Source: Rhodosorus marinus CCMP1338
Lineage: Eukaryota; Plantae; Rhodophyta
Length of the DNA: 64,000 nucleotides
Assembly: GCA_029953675.1 (NCBI GenBank)
Contig: JAMWBK010000003.1
Location: 248,001-312,000 of the forward strand
Direction: 5' to 3'
Below are positions 4,268-60,839 of this stretch, one piece after another. A program made the translations under genes and the position numbers. The notes under the pieces are model-generated. The model had not been told where the DNA came from. It searched no databases and saw only the letters and a list, made by a program, of their open reading frames with translations. The first letter of the stretch is position 1, and the number at the start of each line of letters is the position of its first letter.

Positions 4268-5445
4268 ATGGGTAGCACAGATGAGAGAGCTTCGTTGCTG
4301 GAGCAAGGGAATAACATGGAATCTGCTGTGGCGCCGGTGCGCGGGGAGATGCATGCTAGTGTTGCTGGGGTTGTGCAGGATATTATCCTAGGCGCTGCTG
4401 ATGGTTTAACTGTACCGTTTGCCCTTGCAGCTGGTCTGACTAGTGCCTTCTCGGATTCGAAATATATCATCGTTGCTGTGCTCTCGGAGCTCGCCGCAGG
4501 AGCAATCAGGTAAGCCTTGCGCTACAGGGTGCTCGGAAATTCAGAAGATTAGTCGCGAGATCTCTAAGGACGTGCCGATTTACTATCATCTCTGTTAGCA
4601 TGGGCCTCGGGGGTTACCTCAGCGGGAAGACTGAACTAGACCACTACAAGATCGAGAAAAAAAGGGAGGAATACGAGGTCAAACACCAAGAAGATGACGA
4701 AGTTGAAGAAACCTTGGAGATCTTCCGTGAATATGGCCTATCCGATGAGCAAATTGCACCTATATGCGAACATTTCAAGAAGAATCACGTAAGATTTTGC
4801 CCAATACAAATCGCGGACGCACTCTCCCCCCCCAATTACGAATCGTGCATGCACTCTCCTTTGTAATTGAGATGCTAAGCGAAGTCCCTGGTCCCGCCGA
4901 CGCACCTTGTTTCTTCCGTACAGGTTGCTTGGGTTGACTTTATGATGAAATTCGAGCTACAACTAGACAAACCAGATGAGATGCAGCCAATTTATAGCGC
5001 TCTAGTAATCGGCGGAGCTTATCTCCTGGCTGGAATGATACCTCTCCTCCCAGTAAGCTCGTCCACACCTGGTCCCTTTTGAAGGAATATCAAGAATTAA
5101 CTGTCCCGGCGAAAAGAAACTAAGAAGATTCTGTTCTTACAGTACTTGATCATAGGGGACGCTCGACTAGCGCTGAAGTACAGTATCGTCTTCACGCTCA
5201 TTGCTCTCTTCGTCTTTGGAATCCTGAAGGTAGGTCAAGCAGACCCATGCTCTGAACGTCTCTTATCCAACCATCGAAACCCATGCCATCTCTTACAATG
5301 CTTCCCATTGCTCCAACGCTTCCGACAAAACCAGAGCAAAGTATTGAGGCAACCGAACGCGTTGAAGGCGGCAATTGAGACCATGATCACTGGAGGTGTA
5401 GCCGCTGCAGCTGCTTTCTTTATCGCAAGATTGATTCCGACATAA
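4268..5445 (+). CDS. VIT1: Vacuolar iron transporter, VIT1/CCC1 family, about 5 exons
   Basis: 'DIILGAADGLTVPFALAAGL', 'ELAAGAI(S)MGLGGYLS', 'WVDFMMKFEL', 'LFVFGILK' and 'ETMITGGVAAAAAFFIA' are hallmark VIT1 segments joined by GT-AG introns. Confidence 0.96.
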
Positions 5446-7171: not shown

Positions 7172-10100
7172 TTAGTTTTCTGAAATGATTAGTCGGCGGA
7201 CGTTGGTGAGGACCGGGTGGTCCGTGAGGTTCATGTTGGGGTCGGCGAACTTCTGCCAGAGGAGGTCGTCCAGCTGCTTTCGAAGGGTTCGTACAAGAAC
7301 GCCAACTTTCGCCGGAGCCCTGAACTGGATCCAATCGTCTACGGTAATGATTCCTCGGTCGTGATGTATCCTGATGTCACCACCGAATAACAAGAGAGCA
7401 AAGGGGGATACCATCGTCGAATCTCGCAGAAAATCTTTCCCTTCTTTCCCGGGCCCTCCACGTCGAATCTTCTCATTGTAAACAAGCCAACCTGTCTCCA
7501 GCACATTCTCCTCAAAATTCACGCTCCCCTTGTCCAGGAATACTCTCTGCCCGTCTCGGAGCCTCAGCTTCAGTTCCCTGGGCAGCCTCCTTGAATTATC
7601 AACTACCTTGCCTCCAGCAACCTCGCGATAGACCTGTTCGGGTGAATCTACTCGAACTACATGTGGGTAGAGCGCTGCACACACTACCGCTTTCACGATT
7701 TGGGTCACCGAGGAACTATCGTTGCTCCGCGTAGAGAAGCCGGCATCGGAAAGCGCTTGTTCAAACTGCTTGACGCCCTCCGAAATTGTGTTCATCGTGC
7801 GCCTGGACACGGAATTTGCCTCGCAGAAGGCTTTCGCGTTCTTTGCAGACCTGAACGCTTCGTGCACCTTGCTATATGCTAGCAGATCAGATTTGCCCCA
7901 ATTGAAGGCCCGCTTGCGGCTGGGGTCTGAGAACGGCTGACGAACTAGCCCAGCAGATACGATAGCCAGGCATGGGTCAACACACCCAAGCAGGGACGAG
8001 TAAATCAGAAGCTTTCCAAGCCGTACATCCATGGGAAGAACTGCCAGGTGGGCCCCAAGTGCGGTTAGCTCCCGGCCCTTTGGACTGGAGCGAGAAATGG
8101 AGCCGAGGTCGGTGAGGTTGCGCAGCGACGACTCCACGGCATCAGGACTTGGCGGATCGACCGCTAACGCAAGAACCTCTCCAGGATCCCGATTAAGGGC
8201 AGACATTACAGTCAAGCAGCACCGATCGAGGGAAGTCCTTAGTAACTCTGGAACATCCATGTTCCGCAGGCCCTCGAAAGTAGCTTTCTTGACTAGCCGA
8301 AAACAAATGCCAGGCCTTACCCTACCGGCTCGACCGGCGCGCTGCTTCGCGCTAGCCTTTGAAATAAACTGTTCATCGAGTGTGAACGATTGGCTCAACT
8401 CGTCGAACCCGGAAATTTTCGCTCGAATGGAGTCGACCACATAAACAACGTCCTCCACTGTTACCGACGTCTCAGCGACGTTCGTTGAGCAAACTACCTT
8501 TCGTAGCCCGCGAGGTGGTCTCGAAAAAGCTTTTTGGGAGTCTGCAGGGCTTAGCAATGCGTGCAGTGGAACCGGCCACAAGCAGTTCGAGTCGGAGAGT
8601 CTTGATACTAGGGCCATGATATCTGCGATTCCTGGCAGGAAGACCAGGATAGATCCATCCTTTTCCTCCGCTTGTTTGTCAATGGCAAAAACGAGCCTCT
8701 TGATCAAGTCAAGGTTCACAAAGCCCTCGTCAATGATGTTCAGAGTTCTCTGGAATGGATCTTCGCTAACCACTTCGTCGTTGTTCTTCCTTACGCCTCT
8801 TTTCGTCCCAACATCTCCATCTCGCAGCTTGAACTCAGCTGTTCGTAATGCTTCCTCGAGGTAAAACTCAGTGACGGGGAACGTTCTCCCCGAAATAGAG
8901 ATTATCGGTATACTACGATTCAGCTTCTCCTTGAAGTACGATGCAAACCTCTCCGCGTCCAAGGTTGCCGACATCAGCACCACTTTAAGGTCTTTTCTCG
9001 AAGCAAGCACCTCGCGCAAAAGGAGCAGAAGAATATCCGTCTCAATAGACCTCTCATGAACCTCATCCACAACAACATGTGTTATATCTCGAATTCCTGG
9101 ATCACCCTGAAGTCGCCTAAGCAAAATCCCCTACAAGGTCCCACAACCAGCGGAAGCAATAGAAAGGCACGTTTAACATGATGTCCGCGAGATCAATGGC
9201 CTTGCTCAGTTTTGAAGACAAACCGTTGTACAAAACGCAAGGCGCGTGTTGGGGCCTATCTTCGAGTCCAGACGCACTTGGTAGCCAACGTCTTGTCCCA
9301 CTTTTTGGTTTCTAAACGGATTACAACCAGGCAAAAACAACAAGAACACGAAGGGAATTCGCTTTCTCAGTGAGCGCCCAAAGTTCGGAAGCAGCTTGTC
9401 GGTAGACTTTCTGGCCTGCGTACCTCTCCAGCGCGACTCTCTCAGCGACTGAAGCGGCCGCAAGCCTCCTCGGCTGTGTCACCATGATAAACACGTTCGG
9501 ATCATCTACCTCATAGCTGTCTAAAATAAACTATATATGTGTGAACATGAACATCTGAAGCTCAATAATTCTGTCCATCCTCAGAACTTACAAACCCATG
9601 AAAGTGTTGCCCTACTCACCTGGGGAACCTGCGTAGTCTTTCCCGAGCCTGTGGCACCACTAACGACCAATACTTGGTTTTCGGACAGGTCTTCAATGAC
9701 AGACGTCTGATGTTTCCAAGCAGGCAAGGATCTCCTCTTCGCCATAATTTCCGCTGACGGGTTGGAAGCGAATGTCTGCCTCTTGCGAGTTACTCGCTTT
9801 TGCGTAGCACGGGTTCTTTGGGAAGCCTTGCGTCCATCGTGTGCAGGAGATTGGATTCCGACTTTTCCAACCGCGGAAGCGATTTCGTCATCAGCCCGCT
9901 TGCTCACAAGGTGCCGTCGCCGAGCAATCAAACCTGCATCGTCGACGATTTTTTCGAGGTCGCTATGATGCAGGTATGAAATCAGGTTCATCAAAATCGG
10001 CTCCGGATGAGATAATTCCAGTTCGGCCCACGCTGCGCGGGAACGCTCCGCCTCCGACACCAAGCCTCGCATCAACGCCCGACGAGTTGCGGCAGACGTG

Positions 10101-11299
10101 TTCTCTCCGCTCACGTCGACAACAGGCAAAGCATAAGGATACGAACCGAGCACGTCACGGAAGCAAATTCGGACCTTGCCCGATACCGCAGGCAGGTCTC
10201 TCAGACCATCGATACAAACGAAAAAGAGTCCATCATCATCAGTACCAAAGGAAATTTGGTCATCGTAAATCGCTTTTAGAGCCTCTGCTTCTTCTTGCCG
10301 GAGATTTGCCAGTTGTCCTTCAGAGACAACGGACGGGCTCTCATAATCCTCGAACGGTCCAACGACCGACTTAAATAATGATATGACCGCCGCTGGAAGG
10401 TCGCTTCCATTGTCCCTCAAAGCTCGCTCAGCCGCGAGCTTGCTCGAAGCGTACCGCTTGCTCAGCTCGCGCGCTCGCCCTGCATCCACATAGATTCCAT
10501 CCCGAACCACTTCAAGGTCGGCGTGCGGCTTGTACGCTTTCGGAAGCTCTGCCTCATCGAGGTTCATGCACAGCCAGTCGAGTGCTGCGTCATAGTTGCA
10601 ACCAGGTACCCTAGCTGCGGCCACCTCCACGTCCGTTCTCGCAAAGCCCAAAAACGTCAATCTTCGAACCGTATTCTCAAAAGCCCTGCTTGAAATCTCT
10701 TCGTCCGGCTCGACGTGGTGCTGAGATGCCCCCAACTGCAGCGCAGCATCTTCGATAGCAAGCCTCGATTTCTCGGAGAGCCTGACCTCAGCAAGCTTCG
10801 TATTCTGTTTTTCACGTGCCACTTTCTTCTTGTCTATTTCCTTCTTTCGTGTATCCCTCTCCTCGGCAGCCTTCTCAGCCTTCGCAAAAGTGGACCCCAG
10901 TTCAGCCCAAGTGGTTCTGTACTCCGGTGCCATCAAACGATGCAGTGGTTTCCCTCGCTCAAGTTTCGCCAGCACCGTAAGCGCTGCCAGCTCTTCATCA
11001 GCTCCCTCACCGAAAACTGGTTCCCATTCTCCTTTCGCGCCCTTTGGCTCTCCCCGTTTCCCCCGGGGAATCAAGCACTTCACCTTTCCATCGGGCAGAT
11101 TCCTATAAACCGGCCTCAACCTCTTATCCCGTTGACAGCACTCCGAAAGAAGACCTTTGGGCGTCTTCCCAAGCCAACCTCCACCTCCAGTTTCTTTTCT
11201 CTTGTCCTCATCTCCACCTCGCACAACACCACCTCTAAGTGCGGAGGCAGAAGAAACTACAGCTCCTCCTGCGCCAGTTCGACCCCTTCTCTTACCCAT
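7172..11299 (-). CDS. DExH-box RNA helicase, DHX57/DHX29/YLR419W-like (UBA + RWD + helicase core + HA2 + OB)
   Basis: 'GATGSGKTTQVPQ', 'DEVHER', 'MSAT', 'STNVAETSVT', 'QRAGRAGR'. UBA-like 'DAALDWLCMNLDEAELP' and RWD-like 'EEAEALKAIY'. Confidence 0.93.
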
Positions 11300-33777: not shown

Positions 33778-36700
33778 TTAGGCGTGCACACGTTTCAAAA
33801 CTGCCCTTGACGATATAGTACTACCCTCTGGACAGGCTACAGCAAACAAATCTCCGAATACGACCTTGTGATCGTGCTTATATCTCTCTCGCGCAAGGGT
33901 CCGCAGCGGTTCGCTGTCCTCTCGACTAGTGCCTGGAGCGGAATCAACGGAAAGTTTACGTTTGTCAGACGGAGCATCCAAACAGCAAGGATTGTGCGGA
34001 GGGAAGAGCTACTACCTTTTGAACCATCAACATTAACCGCCATGCAGCGAACACACGGCTTGACGTTGGCAATCGCAAGCTCACCTGCGTTAAACCGTCC
34101 CTTAAAATCCGCGCTCGCAACTGGTGAAGTCTCGACATAAACGTTGCCTCGGAACACATCCTCGTCAGCTGGAAGCTTTCCGTCCTTGATCAGCTTCTCG
34201 TTCAGGCTCCTAACGGTGGCTCGAGAGACAACCAGAAGCGCCTCCTCGTTCTGCATTTGAGAAACCCCTTCTACGATTCTAACATCAGCTTTTAAAACTC
34301 TTGAAAGCCACTCCCAGGAACTTGGCAAGCCCGCATCTGCATCAAACAGAATCGAAGCTCAGGCACGGCGAAATTGTGGACGCTCGTTTTCTGTTCCCCA
34401 TTGAATTCCAATTGACGGCGATAGCTACCTCTAACCTGCTCCATTCTACCACATACCCGAATCTCACGGTTCTCTTGAGCTGAATTCTCCTCCAAAGGTA
34501 CAGATATAGATTCCTCCCCAGCGGCGAAACCCAGTTCGGCCGCTACCGCGTCACTGATCTTCAAAGTAAGGCATGTCCCTGCCGGGTCTATCTCTGCCTC
34601 AACAAACGCCATTCGTGGATTCCTAAGCAGCAAGGATACAGCCTCTTAGCAAAAGCACACCCAGCAACACTACATGTTTGGGAATCGCGAAGCAGATACC
34701 CATTGGCATACTTTTTCAACGAAATCGCTCTCTTCACCCCTCGCTCGATTACTGAAAACCTGCGGTCCTGGCTTAAGCCGTCCGGCCCGATCTTCCACTG
34801 ATCCACGTCCATGCCCCCAAGACCCTTCACCGGGTAGACAACAATACGCTTCACTTGGATCTCTTGAACCGGTACGCTAGGGTTGATCGTCACTTCGTTT
34901 GCATCGCTGAGGAAGTGGTCCCCGAGAAAAGCTATTAGTTTGTCCACATCATCCATAGTGCTCGCCAGTCCAAAAGAGACTCGTACTGCACCAGTTCTCA
35001 TGTCTTTGACAATGTCCTTTGTTTGTTGAGAACAGTGAACGATGGAATTCAGTCTAGATTGAGCCGGCAAGTCACTACGGCAGTACCACAGAATTGCGTT
35101 CTTCTGGACATACCTTGTCATCTCCGCAAACATGTCCGGCTTCGTACTGCGCCTGAACGTCTTCGCTTGAAAGTCCTAGAAGCCGGTGGCATGCACCAGG
35201 ACTACACATGCACCCAGTCCGCAGTGCGATTCCTGTCTCAAATGAGGCACCAACTGATTTCAGCAACTACATCCAGGATAGATTTGATGCACCAAAACCT
35301 CACCTTCCAATGCGGCATATTTTTCCACTGTTTTGTGGCCGATCGCGTTGCCATGGTGATCGTTCAGAACGAATGCAATCACTGAGCCCGCCGACTCCTG
35401 AACAAGCACCATCTCGTTGTCCGGACCTGCAAGGCAACGGTGGACACAAAGGACGCTTAGAGAGCTGCAACGACCGATCATGCAAAATGAAGTAGACGAG
35501 AACAAGCTTCCCGACGAAGATCTGCTGTTGATTCTCGGTCAGAAGGTCCGGTCTCGAATGAAGCGATCAAGTCAACGCTCACCCACTTGGTCGTCCAGAA
35601 TTGTGACCAGTTTTTGTCCGTTTGAGTACGACATGATCTCGAGTCTGGAGACAGCCTCAGATTTGAGTTCGCAAACAACCTGAGAAGTTCTGGAGACACC
35701 ACCAATTCTCTCGAGCTGGTCGAATCCACTTTTAAGTGCAGCCAAAGCATTCATGTTCAACGATCCGTCCTCAAAAAAGTCCTCTGTAATGGATTTAGGG
35801 CGTATGAATCCATCGCTCGAATAGGCAGCCACCGTACCACCGCCAAAGAATGACTAAAACGGCACAAAGGCACAAAGGAGACGAGAGTTAGATCGGACCT
35901 CGATGTCTCCGGTCTTGCAACTGCAAGTCACACCTTTCCACGCTTCAGAAGCTTCTCTCCTACCGACCGCTTCTTGACGATCATAGCAGCCAAGCCCGTC
36001 GGATATCCGAACAGTTTGTAAAACGACATCACGAATATGTCAATGTCGGGATTCTGGGAGAGATGTATCTTTGACGTCGATGCGAGCTTTGCCCCATCAA
36101 CTAACGTAGCTACTTGTCCACCAGCGAATCCTGCAGAAGTCATGGTATTCCGTTCGCTTCAATGCCAATGCTCGGATTCAGAAGCAGGTGAGATCTTCAG
36201 CAGACAACAGACCTGAAACTCCATTTCGCTTCACGTGTGAACAGATGTCCAAACTATACCTTCTGCCAGAGAAGTTAGATTCTCCAGGAAACGCGAATAG
36301 TGCAAAATTTGAGTCGTCAGGGTTTAGCGAGTCTTCAGGTCTTTGAAGCAGCTCTTGAAGTTGACAGGGATCGAGAACACGAGAAGCTGCTCCGTAGCGA
36401 TTAGCCTGGGGATATCCCACAGTCAATCAGAGTTCTGAAACCTGTCGTTTGGATGTAAGAAGATGCGCTTACTATATCCTTAATGGACATCAAGGATTGG
36501 TGAGCGTCCGCAGAGATGATGGCCTTGCAGCCTTCATTCCAGGGGAGGCATGACCCCACCAAGTTGAGCGCTGCTGTTGCTCTTAATGTTCACAAGAAGA
36601 AGAAAAGGGGCGTATTGCCGGGGAGAAACATACGCAGAAACTCTTAGCGTACGCCTGATTTCTGGGAGCTTGAAAGGCACCTTCAAGACCTCTTCGAAGC

Positions 36701-40068: not shown

Positions 40069-41477
40069 TTATAGCATGGATCTCTCCATTCGTCGTAGGG
40101 TGAGGTACGCTCCACCGGGACGCTCGGGAATGATGGTTCCATCAAGTAGCTGTTCGCACTCGATGCGAGTGCTTGCCGCAATTCGATTAAGACCTGCGAG
40201 ATATCGGAAGACAATTTGACGTCCTAAGTTTTAGGCTCCCTACAACCGGCTGATGAGCAACCGATCTCCAGGTAGCTTACCCATCTCATCGACATCCCTT
40301 CCAACACCGAACGCAAAGAGCCGGACACCCATGAGCTCAGCTGCACTCCTAGCTTCCCGCTGAGAGGCTTCAAGTTCTGATGTTGAAGTCTGACCGTCGC
40401 TTAGCAGGAGCACAACGGCATCACCTCCAAAGTTGCCATCTTCAGTTAGCAGTTCGTGTGCCGTCTTGATGGGTGCCGCAATATCCGTGGAACCCATGAG
40501 CTGCTGCATTTTATCGACACGCTCGGGTATGTCCTCCGAAATATGGCAGATAGGAATAATCGTTCTTGGCGACTGATTGAACTGAATAAGTCCCACGGCG
40601 GAATCGGGTCTCCGCTCCCTGAGATTGTCGATCAGCTTGCGAGTGAAGGACTTCATTGCGTCAAAATCTTCACGGGTGACGCTGGAGGAACCATCGAGCA
40701 ACAGCACGACTGTCAGACCCCTCTTCAGACCCCGGGCAGGTGCCATTTCGCTCATCACGCTGGACGTTGGAGAAAGAGATATCGGAGAACCTGGTTGTGG
40801 GTGGAACAAAGGTTCAGTCTTCTCTACAAAAAACGTGTGACGGGATTACTGAGCGTGTTGCCGTACCAACCCTGTCACGAGAACTGTCTCCACGGACGAG
40901 CTCTAGAATTGCCTCAATCTCCGGGTTTGAGGGCACAACCCATGGCTTGTTCTTCTTCTCGGAGACATGCTTCTGAGCATAGAGGTTCTTCCAACCGCCT
41001 GCCAAGTCCGCAGAAGCTTTACGAGCGGGACGAGACGAACAAGCATTTTGCATCAGACAAACACCTTTAGAAAACTTTCAAGCAAAGAGCAACTACTGTC
41101 CAAAGGTGCAGTGGGTCATACCTTCGAGAAGGCTGTTGTTGGCCTGCATTCCCCAGCGGACTTTAACTTTGTCCTTCCACAGATTGTTGTTCTTGAGCAC
41201 AAGCTCTCTCAACCTGTGATTTATCTGAGAGCAGGAGATCATATCACACAAACGTACCGAGAGTGAATGAGACATAGGGCTCTTCCGCCAGACTGTTCAA
41301 GACGGCCCGAAAGAGAAAGCGAATTCGAACCATTTCCATATGCAGAAGATCCCTAGCTGTGAGCTCAGCCAAACATATGTTGATAATTTCATTTGGCAGC
41401 ATATCCATCTCAATTACGTCGTTCTTCTTGCCTGATTCCTGTTCCCGTTCAAGAGCCATCCTGGATACTGTTGCCAT
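40069..41477 (-). CDS. F-box + von Willebrand factor A domain protein, 5 exons
   Basis: F-box 'LPNEIINICLAELTARDLLHMEM / INHRLRELV...LWK' splices in frame to a VWA domain 'VVLLLDGSSSV...GSTDIAAPI...VVLLLSDG...LFAFGVG..VDEM / GLNRIAAS'. Stop TAA at 40069-40071. Confidence 0.85.
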
Positions 41478-49452: not shown

Positions 49453-50372
49453 ATGGCCACTAAGGAAGGATACGTAGCCCAAGCCCCTCGGAAGAAGGAA
49501 GGCGATGGGGTCACTACGCGAGGTGGGTGTACGAATTCTTATGGAAGAAATATGACGTTCTTGACCTTTCTGAAAGGTGAGCTCTATCCTCGTGCTTGGT
49601 CCTGCTTTGACCAGGTAGGAAACCGCCGAGATCTCCTGAGATTGATGTGATCTATGAAGATGAAGGTTATGTCGTTGTCAACAAACCAGCCGATGTCCGG
49701 ATGGATGGAGAGTTCGACGTCACTGTAGAGAAACTGGTCAGGGCACATATGACAAAAAAAGATGCGACCTGGGAGAAGGAGGGGAAAATCCGATTTGTGC
49801 ATCAGCTTGATTATGCAACGTCCGGTGTCTTGCTCCTCGCACTTACTCGACCAGCGGCAGCTTTCACCTGCAAGCAATTTGAACGGCGTACGGTACAGAA
49901 AAAGTACCTCGCCCTTGTCTATGGCACAATACCGCCAGGTACCTACAAGTACGACGAGCATATTGCGAATCAACCAGGCCTTGACTTTCGTATGACAGTG
50001 GGCACGAGCTCAAACCCAGGGAGGTCAGCGCTTACTTATTGCACTCCAGTAGGCTATGGAGAGTATCTCGGGAAACGCGTCACCAAGGTACTGTTGGAGC
50101 CGTCGAGCGGAAGGCGACACCAGCTTCGCGTGCACCTGCTGACGGCAGGGTTCCCGATTGTGGGAGACGCAACCTACGCGCTTGACTCAGAACTCGGTCC
50201 GGATGACCCAAGCACACCACCTAGGATGTTTCTTCACGCATGGAATCTCCTGATCAAGCTCCCAGCACCAATCGGGTTTAGGCTGTTTGAGACAGAAGAT
50301 CCGTTCAAGGGCTTTGTCGAGCTTTCTCCGTCACCGCCAGCCGACTTTTCCGCGCTGGTCAGTCTGGCATGA
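49453..50372 (+). CDS. RluA-family RNA pseudouridine synthase, RPUSD1-like
   Basis: 'VVVNKP.DVRMD', catalytic 'VHQLDYATSG' (the HQLD variant typical of RPUSD1), 'KKYLALV', 'GRRHQLRVH...G.PIVGD..Y', 'RMFLHAW'. A short first exon splices in frame at about 49523/49617. Confidence 0.9.
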
Positions 50373-54523: not shown

Positions 54524-56799
54524 CTAATCCCTCTCATCGTCACTGTTCAGCATTTTTCTTGTGCGATCTACTTCTTCCTTAATGTCAATAAACTCCTCCT
54601 CAACTTCTTCGATTTCAATATAGTCATCTTCCTTTCCGATGTTGAACTCGGCTAACTTGTCCTCAATTGCCTTCATGAGGTCCGCCTTTGTGGCCAAATA
54701 TTCAGCCCACTTCAGACGCATATCTCGCCTCTCCGCCGCCTTACCACTTCTCATTGATTCCTTGAGCTCATCGTCCTCCCGCTTGAACTCCTCGCGATAT
54801 TTTTTGATGTTCTTCCTTACATTCTTTTCCTGCTCCGCGGTGAGGTACAGCTGCGGACGCGGTCTCCACAGGAACTGGTACATCTTGTTCATGTTAACTG
54901 TAGCCGTCATCCTTCCACTGATGTTGTAAACGTTGTAGCCGTTGTCGGCCTCCCAAGACTCGTTCGTGGTGTAACTGCAAACGAATCTTCCGCTTGCGTC
55001 CCACTCCATGTGAGTTGCGCTGTAGTGTTCAGCCAGTCCAATCTAATCAAAAGAGCGAGCATGCAAACTATGGCGTAAGCACACGAGGGAGCAGCAATAG
55101 AGGAAAAAAAAGAGGTTCAAAATTCTACCAAGTCAACATACCAATTCGTGTTCAGTCACGTTGTACCATTCGTACGTTCCGTTCGTTGCTTCTGACGGAT
55201 GCCCTACACGAGCGAGGAGCGCAACCGTACCCAGCGGAGACCATAAGATCGACTTGAATTGCTTCTTCGGGACAGTGAAGATATGCTTCAGCTTTCCGGT
55301 TGAGGTGCTGTCCATAGAGTAGAAGGACACGTCGGCGTAGTTGGCTTCCTCTCCGTGAATAACTCCAAAGCGGTTCCCCTTGGGCTCCCATTCGAATGCT
55401 GATACCTTCTCCTTCTCCTTGAACTCTAAAATGTCAATGGGGTAGTTCTTGTCGCGCATGTGGAAAATCTCAAAGTTGGTGTACTGGTGTTTGCGGTTCT
55501 TTCCGAAACGGATTACTCTGCAGCTCAGGAAATTTCCATCCTCCTTCCACTTCAACTGTACATTGCTGACCGAATAGAGACCCTTCTGCCTCAATTCTAC
55601 CCGCGACGGGATTTCCAGCAAGCATACCCGCGCGGGGGAATCGCCCATTTCCGGTGTCCAGTACGCAATAATGGGGTCCGTCGGAGACCATTCAAAGGCC
55701 TGCACGCCGGGAATTGCGATCTTCTTCTTCCCCAGCAAACCCATTGACGGCGTAGTGTACACGGAAATCACGTTCTCGCCTAAGCGCGCGAAATAACGGT
55801 CATCGGGAGACCACTTGAAGATCGGCCATACTGGCGGAACCTCCTTGCCTTCCTCGCCCGTCAGCTCTGTCCTCTTGTAGACCGGAAACCATCGCAGCGG
55901 CCTCCCCGTCGCAACCTCCCAAACGACAACGTAACGATCGTCAATGTAATCATCGGAGGGTGGCGACTCCTCTCCAGGAGAGATTTCTACACCGCTCCAG
56001 GTCACCAAAAAGCTATTGAAAAGTAAGTGCGGTACCATAGCGAACGTGAGCAGGTGAAAGCTGGCATAAGCATTGCGATATAATCAAAGCTGTTTAGATG
56101 CGTTTCTTACTTTTCCTGCTTGGAAAACTGAGCATAGGAAACATTCTCATGGGGGAATCTCTTCAGCTTCTTAAATTCCGGACCACCCCACACCGCGATA
56201 CCCTTGTCATGGAAAGTAGCCAAATAGTTCCCTCTAGTAGACCACATTGCCTTGGAATCAGTCCAGTACTCTTTTGCGAGAATTCGCTCACTTCCTACTA
56301 CAGAATCAAACCAGAACACCTCGACTGCATTATTCTCTTGAACGACTGCGAATTGCTCTCTAGATCGCTTATCATCGAGCCACTCGGGAAGAGAGCGCTG
56401 GGCATCAGCGTCCAGCTCATACTCCTTCTCAACAAGGGAGGATTCATCAAATGTCTCCGTGGTGCTCATAATCTTGTCAGCATCCGCGAGGAGAATAACA
56501 GAGAGTCTGTGGTTCGCATCCAGGCGAAAACCATCCAGAACCTTCAAAGCCCTCATCGCCGTTTCCGGCTTTTTATATTCCACAAAAGCAATACCGGTCG
56601 TGTCCCCATTCTCATCCTTCTGAATCGCGATCCCCTTCTCACCAAGATCACCTACCTCCAACCTGGGACTCAGGAACTTGAAAAGCTTTTCATACTTCGA
56701 CTCCCCTACTTTCGGAATATTCAACACTACAATCGACCTGGCAAGAGCCGCCTTCTGACGATTCTTTCTCTCCCGCTCCACACTCCTAGATTCTACCAT
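54524..56799 (-). CDS. eIF3b: Translation initiation factor eIF3 subunit B (RRM + WD beta-propeller), 3 exons
   Basis: RRM 'TTGIAFVEY...LDGFRLDANHRL', 'WSTRGNYLATFHDKGIAVWGG', 'FKWSPDDRYFAR', 'FEWEPKGNRF', 'MEWDASGRFVCS...DNGYNVY', 'QFLWRPRP'. Confidence 0.97.
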
Positions 56800-58176: not shown

Positions 58177-60839
58177 GATGGATGCAAGATGCGGTACTCT
58201 TCTCGAGGTTGGTGAAGAGCATGCCGCGAACCCTTTGACAGAAGGGCTTTTCGCTTGGCGTTTGTTTTGGGCGAGATGCAAAGGATAAGAGCTAGGATTG
58301 AGCGGGTTTCGAACGCGGATACGCGATTTAAATCCATTTCAAACAGGGCTCCAGATGTCAATCGACTTGCGAGCTTGGGCGATCTCACGCTCTTCTTTGT
58401 TGACGATGATGTAGGTTGCTCTTTCAATCCCTGAACATTTGGTGGAATTCCCTCGCATTTCGGCGCTCGTGGCTAAACCTCTATTCTGTTTTCAACTTTG
58501 CTGTTGTTTAGAGCCAATTGTTCATGGTCGATCTGGGCATCATCGGAGGAGTCTGGAAGGTTGTTCTGAGCGAACCCGTAGAGGATATTGAGTCGATTGC
58601 TGCGGGCAGCGGTGATAAGCTTTTGGTTTTATGGAGTACTTCTTCAGCGTACATCATAGAAGTCGATACCTCTTTTGTCAGAACTGGCAAACCGTTGAGA
58701 GTCTTGAAGTTAGGAAGCGAGGCTTTTGCAGCTCGTCCCGGGCTGAAGATTATCCACGTCGAGTGGCATCCTCGATGTGAGGGACACATTGGGCTGTTTA
58801 CGTCGGATTCCTCGTTTTGGCTGTTTAATGTAGCAAAGTCTGTGGAAGAAGAGGAGCAGCGAATTCTCGTGGGGCCAACGAATCGGGTTATCGTGAGCTT
58901 CGCCTTCGGGCCAGCCTCGGCGTCCAACTGGGAGGTCCTCACGGTTTATTTTACTTCCTTGGACGCTTCAATATTCGCCCTATGCCCGGTGGCACCACAT
59001 GGGCTAAGCTTACCGATCTCAGTGGCAGCTTCCCTCGTCTCCGCAGCTGAGAAGAGATTCGAAGAAACCATTCCGCAGTACAGGACAGCGGAAGACAGCA
59101 GTCGCATGTTGGAAGATGCCGAATTCGGGAACGAGAGCAGCTTTCTAGGTGGAGATTTCCCACAAAAAGCGGAACCGCGACGAATACTGGATTTTCAAAA
59201 GCTGAAAACCGACCCAACCGCGTTCGCAGCTGATCCGCGAGCCGAGGATAGCAGTGCTACGTGGTGGACCAAGCAAGCACGAATTCGGCTCGGGTGGGTC
59301 CGAGAAAGCCTCATCGCTCGCGAGGGAGATCCGACTAGAGCGATTGTGAGGAAACCACGATCCTTTTCACCACAAATGGTTCCGCTTCTTCAAGGTCCAA
59401 TGTACCTAAGAAACGAAGCACTTTCGACGGATCGAATACAGCGAGACTGTCATGAGATAACCGTTCTAGACAATTCTCCTACGGTTATCTTCAGGAGCAT
59501 GGCCGGGAACCGAATCGATGTCCTATTAGCGCATGAGGAAATCGAGCCCGTTTGGAAGCTCTCCAGCAATGGAGTCGAAGACTCTGGCGACGAGGAAGAG
59601 GAAAACCTGAAGGCTGGGGAGGAAGTAGCGCCAGGCTTGATCTCCTTTGAGCAGGTGAAGCTTCCTGGCTGGAGCGCCGAGGAAACTGTCAACAGGCGAT
59701 CGCTGAATAGCATAGGAAAAGTGTTCGCGCTGAGAGGAAAGAGGGCGGAACCTGCCGTCTTTGTGAGATGTGCGGCCGGTTTGTTGTGCCTGAGAATGCC
59801 CTGGCTGAACATGTTGGAGTCGAACGATCCCGAGCAAGTCGCAAACGTGCCGGTTTCCCTGCTGTCGGCGCAGATCGCGACTGGTCATTCTGCGCCAATT
59901 GGTGGCGCGGGAGTCTTCACGGTACCGGAAGGGACAATCGGAGTTATTCTGACCTCTGAGGGCCTGCTGCAGATATCTTCGATGGCAAAGTCGATGCGCG
60001 ATTGGGGAATAGAATCTGCGCCGACGCCGATAGCCAGGAGGAAGCGTGATGAGAAGGATGGACCTAGTGGGAGCGCATTTGAGACTCATCTAGGCAGTGT
60101 CGTTGCCTCTCTTCCTTCCCCGGTGCGATTGGACACGGGTGCGTTCTCCAAGATGAGTTTGATGGAAGCTTTCAAGGTGCTCCTGAACCGGAAGACCAAC
60201 ATGCAAGGAACTTATTTTGGATCGTTTGCTCAGCTGCATGAGTTGATTACCGAGAGGTCGACACTGTGTCGTGATCTAACCCGAGAGCAGAGAAAACGAA
60301 CAGAAGAACTGGAGGACATCATTGCTGTAACTCAGGACAAATCGTCATCAGTCAAGAGAAAGCTAGACCGTTGTAACCTACAGTACGAGAATTTGGCGGC
60401 GCGAGTACGGATGGTCATGCAGATTATTAACGATGGATCTGCGAAGCTGAGCAAAGCAGAGGAGAGGCAGCTAGCAGATTACAAGCTCAGGTGACTCCTT
60501 CTCTGTGCATCGGTCACCTTTGCCCGACCGTTCATGCAATAGGCTAACCCAGATGCCTTTTTACTTTTTGGATGTTCAATGATTAGGAATGCTGAGCTGG
60601 AAAACCGGAGAACTCGTGTCCAGGGGCTTGCACAGGCAGCACGACAGCTTCAGGAAGAAGTTCTTGCGCAGAGAACCACTGAGTCCAGCACGCGATCAAA
60701 TCCGCTTATTCTCCGTACAGCTGATCGAAAGAAGATACACCAGGCCCTCGAAGACCACTCTACAGCAGTACAGAGGGCTCTCGAAACGAACGACGAGCTA
60801 TGCAAACGACTGCGCAGACTAGCGCTGGAGAGCTCCTGA
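58177..60839 (+). CDS. NUP88: Nucleoporin NUP88/Nup82 family (beta-propeller + C-terminal coiled coil); 5' end approximate
   Basis: 'IIHVEWHP...HIGLFTSDSSFWLFNV', 'SFAFGP..WEVLTVYF', 'IFALCPVAP', 'LQGP', and a long C-terminal heptad region. Confidence 0.8.

What the first reader, a model, noticed from the sequence alone, without database searches (positions are those of the whole stretch)
40069..41477. F-box protein fused in frame to an integrin-I-type VWA domain with an intact MIDAS site
Seen: five exons joined by GT-AG introns give one reading frame containing a textbook F-box (LPNEII...DLLHMEMINHRLRELV...LW), a linker, and a complete VWA domain with DxSxS (DGSSS), the conserved Thr ('GSTDI') and the 'SDG' Asp. 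Established: F-box proteins are SCF substrate receptors whose usual recognition domains are WD40, LRR or Kelch, and MIDAS sites bind ligand carboxylates through a divalent cation. Inference: this could be an SCF receptor that recognises substrates in a metal-dependent way, an architecture I do not recall being characterised.
Basis: partly seen in the sequence, partly recalled or inferred. Interest (0 to 1): 0.72.

Follow-up and report, generated by a model that had tools for sequence, protein, structure and literature searches.

The report
Algal F-box protein with MIDAS VWA domain
This red-alga gene really does encode one protein that joins an F-box (the handle that plugs into SCF ubiquitin ligases) to a metal-binding VWA domain. 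The family is conserved in red and green algae, nobody has studied it, and it is a good but unproven candidate for a ligase that recognises its targets through a bound metal ion.

Summary
On the minus strand, ATG 41477 to stop 40069, five exons joined by four GT-AG introns (106, 105, 76 and 87 nt) encode a 344-aa protein. From Met7 it is identical to GenBank KAJ8906342.1, a hypothetical protein of Rhodosorus marinus. Transcripts of a second Rhodosorus strain confirm all four junctions. The Gracilariopsis ortholog is one uninterrupted ORF, so the fusion does not depend on splicing.

The VWA domain is unambiguous (Pfam 86.8 bits), and all five MIDAS residues are invariant in 50 of 50 relatives. 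The F-box is real but not textbook. It falls below Pfam's cut-off in this protein, passes in orthologs (up to 42 bits), and its predicted fold matches only Skp1-bound F-box proteins.

- The predicted VWA lacks the C-terminal alpha7 helix, which is the allosteric switch of integrin I domains.
- The family is widespread in red and green algae, including Chlamydomonas CHLRE_12g518800v5. No land-plant name appeared among the hits.

Databases call these proteins hypothetical, cochlin or collagen, and I found no paper on the architecture.

An SCF receptor that binds substrates through a MIDAS metal is the best reading, but it is untested. The closest analogues are the plant RING-VWA ligases RGLG and WAV3/SOR1. 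I class it as a new variant of a known kind, of moderate interest.

The parts
40069..41477 (-). Whole coding region of the F-box-VWA gene (ATG 41477, TAA ending at 40069; 5 exons, 344 aa). GenBank's model starts at Met7 (41459).
   Evidence: Identical from Met7 to KAJ8906342.1 of Rhodosorus marinus.
41331..41477 (-). Exon 1 (aa 1-49): hydrophilic N-terminus and the first two F-box helices (LPNEIINICLAELTARDLLHMEM).
   Evidence: Junction confirmed by transcripts P0031, P0033 and P0034.
41225..41330 (-). Intron 1, 106 nt, GT..AG. It lies inside the F-box. If retained in this strain it gives a stop at codon 78.
   Evidence: The other Rhodosorus strain has a 105-nt open version that is retained in isoforms P0001 and P0032.
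41122..41224 (-). Exon 2 (aa 50-84): third F-box helix (INHRLRELVLKNNNLW) and the start of the helical linker.
41017..41121 (-). Intron 2, 105 nt, GTATGA..AAG.
   Evidence: transcripts.
40867..41016 (-). Exon 3 (aa 84-134): linker helices with the family-invariant AGGW, LY, PW (W109) and E116.
40791..40866 (-). Intron 3, 76 nt, GTACGG..CAG. An alternative in-frame acceptor at 40824 would add 11 aa, but no transcript uses it.
40281..40790 (-). Exon 4 (aa 134-304): disordered Ser/Pro linker and most of the VWA domain, including all five MIDAS residues.
40194..40280 (-). Intron 4, 87 nt, GTAAGC..CAG.
40069..40193 (-). Exon 5 (aa 304-344 plus stop): VWA helix alpha6, an insertion, strand beta6 (AYLTLRR) and a 5-residue tail. 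No alpha7 helix.
41177..41402 (-). F-box, aa 26-65 (genomic span includes intron 1). Three predicted helices at 29-36, 41-50 and 52-60.
   Evidence: Pfam F-box 16.4 bits here; 19.2 bits in the other strain's ortholog P0031, and family-level hits. PDB profile hits FBXO31, cyclin F, FBXO3 and Skp2. Foldseek top 50 are all F-box proteins.
40892..41176 (-). Helical linker domain, aa 66-125 (span includes intron 2). Predicted to pack against the VWA domain.
   Evidence: AlphaFold pTM 0.82. A beta-bridge at 109-110 appears only in the full-length model. W109 is conserved in 49 of 50 members and E116 in 50 of 50.
40087..40716 (-). VWA domain, aa 159-339 (span includes intron 4).
   Evidence: Pfam VWA 86.8 bits, E 2.6e-24. 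PDB sequence hits to collagen VI, PTMP1, vWF A3, integrins and CMG2. Foldseek to CMG2: E 3e-10, TM 0.72-0.75.
40681..40695 (-). MIDAS motif 1: D166-G-S168-S-S170 (DxSxS) at the end of beta1.
   Evidence: 50 of 50 invariant. Aligned to the DDSSS of PTMP1.
40486..40488 (-). MIDAS Thr235 (GSTDI).
   Evidence: 50 of 50.
40396..40398 (-). MIDAS Asp265 (SDGQT).
   Evidence: 50 of 50.

Best explanation
The locus encodes a soluble, non-secreted 344-aa F-box protein of the red alga Rhodosorus marinus. It belongs to an uncharacterised family conserved across red and green algae.

Proposed mechanism:
- The N-terminal three-helix F-box docks on SKP1 and so on CUL1-RBX1.
- A conserved four-helix linker packs rigidly against the C-terminal VWA domain. 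This linker may stand in for the missing alpha7 helix.
- The VWA domain acts as the substrate receptor. It holds a divalent cation in a perfect MIDAS site (D166, S168, S170, T235, D265), and the cation completes its coordination with an acidic side chain of the target. The target is thereby positioned for ubiquitination.

Shown here: the gene model, the single-polypeptide architecture, domain identities by profile and predicted fold, and invariance of the MIDAS residues and the linker residues W109 and E116.

Inferred: SKP1 binding, SCF assembly, metal binding, substrate recognition through the MIDAS site, and any link to metal levels.
For: Gene model:
- Splice model.
- Identical to the GenBank protein, and confirmed by transcripts from a second strain.
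- The G. chorda ortholog is a single ORF.

VWA and MIDAS:
- Pfam VWA 86.8 bits.
- Motif-by-motif alignment to the solved VWA domains of PTMP1 and collagen VI.
- AlphaFold pLDDT 86.4 and pTM 0.82. Foldseek to CMG2, vWF A3, factor B and integrin I domains, E down to 3e-10.
- All five MIDAS residues are 50/50 invariant. The other residues conserved in at least 95% of VWA sequences lie in the loops that carry or flank the MIDAS residues (G233, G266, V296-G297, D301), on helix alpha1 (F176, M179, F182) and in strand beta2 (Q203, F204).

F-box:
- Pfam F-box-like in 26 of 28 and F-box in 22 of 28 red-algal members at E <= 0.01.
- Above Pfam's cut-off in Pterosperma (42.3 bits), Galdieria (38.3), Mesostigma (28.0) and a Porphyridium paralog (24.8).
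- The N-terminal profile hits FBXO31, cyclin F, FBXO3, Skp2 and GID2; 10 of its 11 PDB hits at E <= 1 are F-box proteins.
- The N-terminal model's 50 best PDB matches are all F-box proteins in SKP1 complexes. Skp2 superposes at rmsd 1.1 A over 41-44 residues.
- The Leu-Pro dipeptide is conserved: Pro in 49 of 50 members.

Location:
- No signal peptide or membrane segment (maximum Kyte-Doolittle score over 19 residues is 1.0, and the N-terminus is hydrophilic).

Precedent:
- RING E3 ligases use a MIDAS VWA domain as an interaction module: RGLG1 with PP2CA (PMC7155146) and SOR1/WAV3 (PMC5924906).
- A VIT-vWFA protein associates with an SCF F-box protein in Dictyostelium (PMC10539598).
Against: - The window protein's own F-box score is below Pfam's cut-off: 16.4 bits against 20.5.
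- Foldseek E-values for the short N-terminal model are weak, 0.1 to 6.
- The conserved Trp of many F-boxes is Leu54 here.
- There are no data on SKP1 binding. Some F-box proteins act outside SCF complexes (established knowledge: Ctf13, Rcy1).
- No substrate or phenotype is known, and no paper was found.
- The invariant Glu116 in the linker, or the C-terminal tail that ends near the MIDAS face, could occupy the MIDAS site within the same molecule. The metal site would then be structural rather than substrate-binding.
- Model coordinates could not be inspected, so the linker-VWA contact and the idea that the linker replaces alpha7 remain unverified.
Confidence: 0.6

Rival explanations
1. The metal site is an internal staple or switch. 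The MIDAS cation is coordinated by a residue of the same polypeptide: the invariant Glu116 of the linker, or an acidic residue or the carboxylate of the short C-terminal tail. The metal site would then hold or regulate the F-box-linker-VWA assembly instead of binding substrate. Substrates, if any, would bind another surface.
For: - Glu116 is invariant in 50 of 50 members and Trp109 in 49 of 50, as strongly conserved as the MIDAS residues.
- The model packs the linker on the VWA domain: pTM 0.82, and a beta-bridge at 109-110 appears only in the full-length model.
- The chain ends 5 residues after beta6, which from VWA topology is on the MIDAS face.
- Green-algal members end in a conserved acidic D-[DE]-x-P-W tail.
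- Integrins use an intrinsic Glu after alpha7 as an internal MIDAS ligand (established knowledge).
Against: - Red-algal C-terminal tails are basic and variable.
- Surface loops around the MIDAS site (GVGRD, MGSTDIAAP, TDGQT) are conserved beyond what metal binding alone needs.
Confidence: 0.17
2. The protein binds SKP1 but does not work as a conventional SCF substrate receptor. The F-box would tether a VWA scaffold to SKP1 in a non-cullin complex, or bring SCF to a large assembly such as the proteasome, in the way the Rpn10 VWA domain is a structural subunit.
For: - Rpn10 VWA domains are among the structural neighbours (8amz_W, 5t0c, 5ln1).
- Non-SCF F-box proteins exist (established knowledge).
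- The VWA domain of SOR1 was proposed to act as a facilitator of degradation rather than a receptor (PMC5924906).
Against: - The closest VWA relatives by sequence and fold are ligand-binding MIDAS domains, not Rpn10. Rpn10 is only 12-16% identical and ranks 44th to 50th.
- Perfect invariance of the MIDAS residues argues for ligand binding through the metal.
Confidence: 0.13
3. The N-terminal region is a degenerate helical domain that no longer binds SKP1, and the protein is simply a cytosolic VWA adaptor.
For: - This protein scores below the Pfam cut-off on both F-box models.
- The Trp position of the F-box consensus is Leu.
- Annotators saw only 'VWFA domain-containing protein'.
Against: - Orthologs pass the cut-off by a wide margin, up to 42 bits.
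- The Leu-Pro dipeptide and the hydrophobic pattern are conserved over the red-green divergence.
- Sequence-profile and fold searches return F-box proteins almost exclusively.
Confidence: 0.07
4. Gene-model artefact or secreted matrix protein. Either the F-box and VWA parts belong to separate genes, or the protein is an extracellular collagen- or cochlin-like adhesin, as database names suggest.
For: - Names given to orthologs include Cochlin, Collagen alpha-6(VI), COL14A1 and collagen-related protein.
- The best PDB sequence hits are collagen VI VWA domains.
Against: - Transcripts span all the exons.
- The G. chorda ortholog is intron-free.
- Fifty orthologs share the architecture.
- There is no signal peptide or membrane segment, and Pfam finds no collagen or LCCL domain.
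Confidence: 0.02

Closest known systems
Canonical F-box substrate receptors of SCF ligases (Skp2, Fbw7/Cdc4, beta-TrCP, FBXO31, FBXO3, SLY1/GID2)
   Same: - An N-terminal three-helix F-box of about 40 aa with the Leu-Pro start.
- A helical linker that rigidly couples the F-box to a C-terminal protein-binding domain.
- The predicted fold superposes on Skp1-bound F-boxes.
   Different: - The recognition domain is a VWA/MIDAS fold instead of WD40, LRR, Kelch or the FBXO-specific domains.
- Recognition is predicted to go through a bound divalent cation.
- The window protein's F-box is divergent and falls below Pfam's cut-off.
Plant RING-VWA E3 ligases: RGLG1-5 (copine-like VWA plus RING; PMC7155146) and WAV3/SOR1 (RING plus VWA; PMC5924906)
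   Same: - An intracellular E3-ligase component in Archaeplastida that carries a VWA domain with a MIDAS motif as the interaction module.
- RGLG1 binds its substrate PP2CA, and its VWA domain has open and closed states.
   Different: - Those are single-chain RING ligases. This protein has no RING and would work through SKP1-CUL1-RBX1.
- The VWA subtypes differ. Here the nearest are collagen VI, vWF A3, CMG2 and integrin I domains.
- This family was found in algae only, with no land-plant name among the hits.
Integrin alpha I domains and the CMG2/ANTXR2 VWA domain
   Same: - A perfect DxSxS...T...D MIDAS motif with near-identical spacing. Asp to Thr is 69 residues and Thr to Asp is 30. By my recollection of the published numbering, the values are 69 and 33 in alphaM and 68 and 30 in CMG2.
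- The closest fold matches.
   Different: - Those domains are extracellular. This protein is cytosolic-type with no signal peptide.
- The predicted domain stops after beta6 and lacks alpha7, the helix whose movement switches integrin I domains between closed and open states.
Dictyostelium Vwa1 (VIT-vWFA) working with the WD40 F-box protein FbxwD (PMC10539598)
   Same: A cytoplasmic vWFA protein with conserved MIDAS residues is functionally and physically linked to an SCF F-box protein.
   Different: - There the two are separate polypeptides, and the VWA domain belongs to the VIT/ITIH/VWA5A clade.
- Here the F-box and VWA are fused in one chain, with no VIT domain.
Midasin (Mdn1/Rea1) MIDAS domain (PMC8837202)
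   Same: An intracellular MIDAS domain that grips protein substrates through an acidic residue coordinated to the metal. This is precedent for MIDAS-mediated recognition inside the cell.
   Different: It is part of a giant AAA+ ribosome-biogenesis machine and has no link to ubiquitin ligases.

Membership tests
F-box proteins (SCF substrate receptors) | The protein's own match to Pfam F-box (PF00646) or F-box-like (PF12937) reaches the curated cut-off. | tested here: not met
   PF00646 16.4 bits against 20.5; PF12937 14.0 bits against 24.3. The ortholog in the other strain scores 19.2 and 16.9 bits.
F-box proteins (SCF substrate receptors) | Orthologs and the family profile are recognised as F-box. 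| tested here: met
   - F-box-like in 26 of 28 and F-box in 22 of 28 members (best E 6.9e-7).
- Pterosperma 42.3 bits, Galdieria 38.3 and 32.2, Mesostigma 28.0, Porphyridium paralog 24.8.
- the family N-terminal profile hits FBXO31 (E 4.9e-4), cyclin F, FBXO3, Skp2 and GID2; 10 of its 11 PDB hits at E <= 1 are F-box proteins.
F-box proteins (SCF substrate receptors) | A three-helix F-box fold that superposes on Skp1-bound F-boxes. | tested here: met
   This rests on a prediction only. AlphaFold places helices at 29-36, 41-50 and 52-60. For the N-terminal model, all 50 best PDB matches are F-box proteins in SKP1 complexes. Skp2 superposes at rmsd 1.1 A over 41-44 aa, and SLY1 gives TM 0.60-0.63. 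E-values are weak (0.1 or higher) because the domain is short.
F-box proteins (SCF substrate receptors) | A conserved Leu-Pro start and the hydrophobic core pattern. | tested here: met
   L27-P28 are present. Pro is conserved in 49 of 50 members and Leu in 44 of 50, and W65 in at least 95%. The Trp of the 'xRW' position is Leu54.
F-box proteins (SCF substrate receptors) | Binds SKP1 and assembles with CUL1-RBX1 into an active ligase. | not testable with these tools
   This needs a pull-down, a two-hybrid assay or a co-folding prediction with the Rhodosorus SKP1.
VWA domain with a functional MIDAS site (integrin alpha-I / CMG2 type) | Pfam VWA (PF00092) above the cut-off. | tested here: met
   86.8 bits against 23.8, E 2.6e-24. 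All 28 of 28 family members match.
VWA domain with a functional MIDAS site (integrin alpha-I / CMG2 type) | All five MIDAS residues, DxSxS...T...D. | tested here: met
   D166, S168, S170, T235 and D265 are present and invariant in 50 of 50 members. They align with the corresponding motifs of the PTMP1 VWA domains.
VWA domain with a functional MIDAS site (integrin alpha-I / CMG2 type) | A Rossmann-like alpha/beta fold with six strands. | tested here: met
   This rests on a prediction. Strands are at 159-166, 198-204, 210-216, 257-264, 289-297 and 333-339. Foldseek to CMG2 gives E 3e-10 and TM 0.72-0.75.
VWA domain with a functional MIDAS site (integrin alpha-I / CMG2 type) | A C-terminal alpha7 helix, the allosteric switch of integrin I domains. 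| tested here: not met
   - The model ends 5 residues after beta6.
- The Pfam match stops at profile position 155 of 174.
- Family members in the alignments end within about 4 to 10 residues of beta6.
VWA domain with a functional MIDAS site (integrin alpha-I / CMG2 type) | Binds Mg2+/Mn2+ and an acidic ligand residue. | not testable with these tools
   This needs ITC, a crystal structure, or binding assays with and without EDTA.
RING-VWA E3 ligases (RGLG, WAV3/SOR1) | A RING finger in the same chain as the VWA domain. | tested here: not met
   No RING match in Pfam at E <= 1. The protein has only three cysteines.
Secreted matrix VWA proteins (collagen VI, cochlin), as orthologs are named in databases | A signal peptide, plus collagen triple-helix or LCCL domains. 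| tested here: not met
   - The N-terminus is hydrophilic, and the maximum Kyte-Doolittle score over 19 residues is 1.0.
- No collagen or LCCL match in Pfam.
- The names come from best-hit transfer of the VWA domain only.

The most novel reading that the evidence does not exclude
This would be the first cullin-RING substrate receptor that reads its degron through a protein-bound divalent cation. An acidic residue of the target would complete the MIDAS coordination sphere. The receptor would be an alpha7-less VWA domain held in a fixed, possibly permanently open and high-affinity, state by the F-box linker. Such a receptor could tie the turnover of a conserved algal protein to cytosolic Mg2+, Mn2+ or Ca2+. 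It has been kept for the whole red-green algal history and then apparently lost in land plants.
Probability: 0.3. Interest if true: 0.7.

Novelty: new variant of a known kind. Interest (0 to 1): 0.47.

Why it matters
F-box proteins define what SCF ligases degrade, and each new recognition domain opens a new class of degron. A MIDAS-based receptor would add metal-mediated recognition of carboxylates to the known modes: phosphodegrons, glycans, hormone-glued degrons and iron sensing by FBXL5.

The family is single-copy or low-copy, short (about 340-400 aa) and soluble. It is present in tractable algae, including Chlamydomonas reinhardtii CHLRE_12g518800v5, as well as Porphyridium and Galdieria. 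The hypothesis is therefore directly testable.

The work also corrects misleading database names (cochlin, collagen VI, COL14A1, alpha-amylase) and at least two fused or truncated gene models.

The family's presence in red and green algae, with no land-plant hit, hints at an algal-specific regulatory pathway.

Tried and rejected
1. First splice model with the intron-3 donor at 40870. It was out of frame with either acceptor and was replaced by the GTACGG donor at 40866.
2. Intron-3 acceptor at 40824. It is in frame and adds EKTEPLFHPQP, but it is absent from all transcripts and from the GenBank protein, so I rejected it in favour of 40791.
3. Extending exon 1 to the strong GTACGT donor near 41256. 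This leaves a 33-nt intron and puts exon 2 out of frame with an early stop (my reading).
4. Intron-1 retention as a real isoform. It is open (105 nt) in the MMETSP strain (P0001, P0032) but is 106 nt with a stop in this strain, so it is most likely unspliced RNA.
5. Searching the 5.8-billion-protein set with the 116-aa N-terminal alignment. It returned only two fragments and told me nothing.
6. Two-gene or secreted-matrix readings. These are refuted.
7. The 204-aa antisense ORF at 40456-41070(+). It lies opposite the conserved VWA exon and is a shadow ORF.
8. Literature searches for the architecture and for Cre12.g518800. There were no direct hits.
9. The contact between the linker and the VWA domain, and the distance from Glu116 to the MIDAS site, could not be checked because the tools do not return model coordinates.
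Full report
**1. What is in the sequence**

The feature lies on the minus strand. Reading down from ATG 41477, five exons give a 1035-nt CDS and a 344-aa product that ends at TAA 40069. The exons are 41477-41331, 41224-41122, 41016-40867, 40790-40281 and 40193-40069. Four GT-AG introns of 106, 105, 76 and 87 nt join them.

My first two attempts at intron 3 were wrong. A donor at 40870 broke the frame. An acceptor at 40824 kept the frame but added 11 residues. The transcript and GenBank comparison settled it as GTACGG at 40866 to CAG at 40791. Retaining any single intron gives a premature stop in this strain.

**2. Independent support for the gene model**

A search of the 5.8-billion-protein collection found 29 relatives. 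The cluster of the best hit contains KAJ8906342.1, 'hypothetical protein NDN08_002835 [Rhodosorus marinus]'. UniRef calls it 'VWFA domain-containing protein'. It is 100% identical to my model from Met7 onward. The window is therefore nuclear DNA of this stylonematophycean red alga.

MMETSP transcripts from another Rhodosorus strain (P0031, P0033, P0034; about 94-95% identical) carry exactly the four junctions. Two further isoforms of that strain (P0001, P0032) retain intron 1 in frame. In the window strain that intron is 106 nt and closed, so this looks like unspliced RNA rather than a conserved isoform.

The Gracilariopsis chorda ortholog (P0011) is encoded by a single uninterrupted 1089-nt ORF (L001 4001-5089). 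The F-box-VWA fusion therefore does not depend on any splicing assumption.

**3. The VWA domain and its MIDAS site**

- Pfam VWA scores 86.8 bits (E 2.6e-24, cut-off 23.8) and VWA_2 scores 58.4 bits.
- The closest solved sequences are the VWA domains of collagen VI, mussel PTMP1, vWF A3, integrins alphaX/alphaM and CMG2.
- In the PTMP1 alignments the three motif blocks line up: DGSSS with DDSSS, GSTDI with GQTEI, and SDGQT with TDGKS.
- AlphaFold2 with a 27-sequence alignment gives mean pLDDT 86.4 and pTM 0.82.
- Foldseek places the model next to CMG2 (E 3e-10, TM 0.72-0.75), collagen VI, vWF A3, factor B/C2a, integrin I domains and, further down, Rpn10.
- In an alignment of 50 red and green algal family members, D166, S168, S170, T235 and D265 are each invariant in 50 of 50. 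The other VWA residues conserved in at least 95% of sequences lie in the loops that carry or flank the MIDAS residues (G233, G266, V296-G297, D301), on helix alpha1 (F176, M179, F182) and in strand beta2 (Q203, F204).

The model has beta1 to beta6 and alpha1 to alpha6 but ends five residues after beta6. The Pfam match stops at profile position 155 of 174. Family members in the alignments end within about 4 to 10 residues of beta6. The alpha7 helix, whose displacement switches integrin I domains between closed and open states (background in PMC7155146), is absent.

**4. The F-box**

On its own the window protein is below threshold: PF00646 16.4 bits against 20.5, and PF12937 14.0 bits against 24.3. 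At family level the call is solid.

- F-box-like is found in 26 of 28 and F-box in 22 of 28 red-algal members at E <= 0.01.
- Distant orthologs pass the curated cut-offs: Pterosperma 42.3 bits, Galdieria phlegrea 38.3 and 32.2, Mesostigma 28.0, and a Porphyridium paralog 24.8.
- A profile of the N-terminal 116 residues hits FBXO31, cyclin F, FBXO3, Skp2 and GID2 in the PDB, with E from 4.9e-4 to about 0.7; 10 of its 11 hits at E <= 1 are F-box proteins.
- An AlphaFold model of the N-terminal region alone (pLDDT 80.4) has F-box proteins in SKP1 complexes as all 50 of its best PDB matches. Examples are Fbw7, SLY1 (TM 0.60-0.63), FBXO31, FBXO3 and Skp2 (rmsd 1.1 A over 41-44 residues). The E-values are weak (0.1 or higher), as expected for so short a domain.
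- Pro28 of the Leu-Pro start is conserved in 49 of 50 members.

I conclude that it is a genuine but divergent F-box, not a textbook one.

**5. The linker**

Residues 66-125 form four helices with invariant or near-invariant AG[GS]W, LY, PW (W109, 49 of 50) and E116 (50 of 50). A disordered Ser/Pro-rich stretch follows at 134-149. In red algae it contains an invariant S-P (S140-P141).

Three observations suggest that the model packs the linker against the VWA domain:
- pTM is 0.82 despite the disordered stretch.
- A beta-bridge appears at 109-110 that is missing from the N-terminal-only model.
- pLDDT is higher for residues 30-125 in the full-length model than alone.

Rigid coupling of the F-box to the recognition domain is a hallmark of SCF receptors (established knowledge from the Skp2, Cdc4 and beta-TrCP structures). 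Whether the last linker helix fills the empty alpha7 groove, and whether Glu116 approaches the metal, could not be checked, because coordinates are not returned.

**6. Cellular location**

The N-terminus is hydrophilic and there is no hydrophobic segment (maximum Kyte-Doolittle score over 19 residues is 1.0). The protein has only three cysteines and a pI of 5.6. This is a cytosolic or nuclear type of protein, not a matrix protein.

**7. Distribution**

An exhaustive HMMER scan of 1.84 billion representative proteins with the full-length profile found about 25 clusters (at 50% identity) that match end to end. Many giant multi-VWA proteins match only the VWA part. Name look-ups and a second word-index search place full-length members in the following groups.

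- Red algae: Rhodosorus, Bangiopsis, Purpureofilum, Erythrolobus, Porphyridium purpureum and P. aerugineum, Gracilariopsis, Galdieria phlegrea and G. yellowstonensis.
- Green algae: Chlamydomonas reinhardtii CHLRE_12g518800v5, Volvox, Astrephomene, Edaphochlamys, Chlorella, Micractinium, Auxenochlorella, Tetradesmus, Scenedesmus, Trebouxia, Nannochloris, Tetraselmis, Chloropicon and Pterosperma.
- Streptophyte algae: Mesostigma and Chlorokybus.

No land-plant name appeared. That is absence of evidence at this sensitivity, not proof of loss.

Source names are 'hypothetical', 'VWFA domain-containing', 'Cochlin', 'Collagen alpha-6(VI)', 'COL14A1', 'collagen-related protein' and even 'Alpha-amylase'. 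None mentions the F-box.

**8. Literature**

Seven full-text searches found no paper on an F-box-VWA fusion or on Cre12.g518800. The nearest published systems are:
- Arabidopsis RGLG1, a RING E3 whose MIDAS VWA domain has open and closed states and which targets PP2CA (PMC7155146).
- Rice SOR1 and Arabidopsis WAV3, which are RING plus VWA (PMC5924906).
- Dictyostelium Vwa1, a cytoplasmic VIT-vWFA protein with conserved MIDAS residues that co-purifies with the SCF F-box protein FbxwD (PMC10539598).
- The MIDAS domain of Mdn1, which grips substrates inside the cell (PMC8837202; listed).

**9. Most likely mechanism**

The F-box docks on SKP1-CUL1-RBX1. The linker fixes the VWA domain in position. 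The MIDAS cation binds an acidic residue of a conserved substrate, which is then ubiquitinated.

- Shown: the architecture, the domain identities and the conservation pattern.
- Inferred: every binding and catalytic step.
- I put this reading at about 0.6.

The rivals are:
- An internal metal staple or switch, using Glu116 or the C-terminal tail (about 0.17).
- A SKP1-bound but non-SCF or scaffolding role (about 0.13).
- A dead F-box (about 0.07).
- Artefact or secreted protein (about 0.02, effectively refuted).

**10. Verdict**

- The architecture is widespread in algae and already in databases, but it is uncharacterised and mostly misnamed.
- It is a new variant of a known kind: an F-box receptor with a new recognition module, paralleled by the RING-VWA ligases.
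- Interest is moderate.

Noticed in passing
window 41225-41330 (intron 1); proteins P0001, P0032: In another Rhodosorus strain's transcriptome, isoforms retain intron 1 in frame (105 nt). This inserts 35 aa between F-box helices 2 and 3. In the window strain the intron is 106 nt and contains a stop, so retention would truncate the protein at 77 aa.
   Followed up: partly
window 40791-40824: An alternative AG acceptor at 40824 for intron 3 is in frame and would add 11 aa (EKTEPLFHPQP) to the disordered linker. No transcript and no GenBank model uses it.
   Followed up: yes
window 40919-40921 (Glu116) and 40940-40942 (Trp109): Glu116 is invariant in 50 of 50 red and green algal members and Trp109 in 49 of 50, as conserved as the MIDAS residues. 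Their role is unexplained. Glu116 could be an internal MIDAS ligand or a packing residue where alpha7 is missing.
   Followed up: partly
window 40768-40773 (Ser140-Pro141): An invariant Ser-Pro lies in the otherwise disordered, variable linker of the 27-28 aligned relatives (motif SSPxSVM). It could be a proline-directed phosphorylation site just before the VWA domain. It is less clear in green algae.
   Followed up: no
window 40456-41070 (+): A 204-aa ORF lies antisense to the VWA and linker exons. It is a shadow of the conserved minus-strand coding region, not a gene.
   Followed up: partly
orthologs P0011, P0023, P0204, P0215, P0220: Database names for family members are best-hit transfers from the VWA domain or plain errors: Cochlin, Collagen alpha-6(VI) chain, COL14A1, collagen-related protein, Alpha-amylase. 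None mentions the F-box.
   Followed up: yes
P0189 (Chlorella variabilis EFN55714.1) and P0058 (Galdieria phlegrea): These are probable gene-model errors. The C. variabilis model lacks the F-box exon and is fused to an upstream LRR gene; a Logan-assembled version, P0175, does have the F-box. The G. phlegrea model is fused to an upstream NAD-dependent epimerase gene.
   Followed up: partly
P0153 (Pterosperma sp. CCMP1384): This prasinophyte ortholog carries CCCH zinc fingers in front of the F-box. This hints at a link to RNA binding in at least one lineage.
   Followed up: no
P0234, P0235: VWA-only proteins from metagenome contigs, labelled 'YegL', are 41-43% identical to the green-algal VWA domain. 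They may be bacterial relatives of the module, or algal fragments labelled by a COG pipeline. The origin of the VWA module is unresolved.
   Followed up: no
window 7172-11299 (-), 33837-35133 (-), 49647-50372 (+), 55133-56038 (-), 58518-60494 (+): The neighbouring genes are ordinary eukaryotic housekeeping genes: a DHX29/DHX57-like DEAH helicase (UBA, RWD, Helicase_C, HA2, OB), a MOSC_N plus MOSC protein, an RNA pseudouridine synthase, an eIF2A beta-propeller and a weak Nup88-like ORF. The window has no tRNA genes and one small tandem repeat at 4800-4859.
   Followed up: partly
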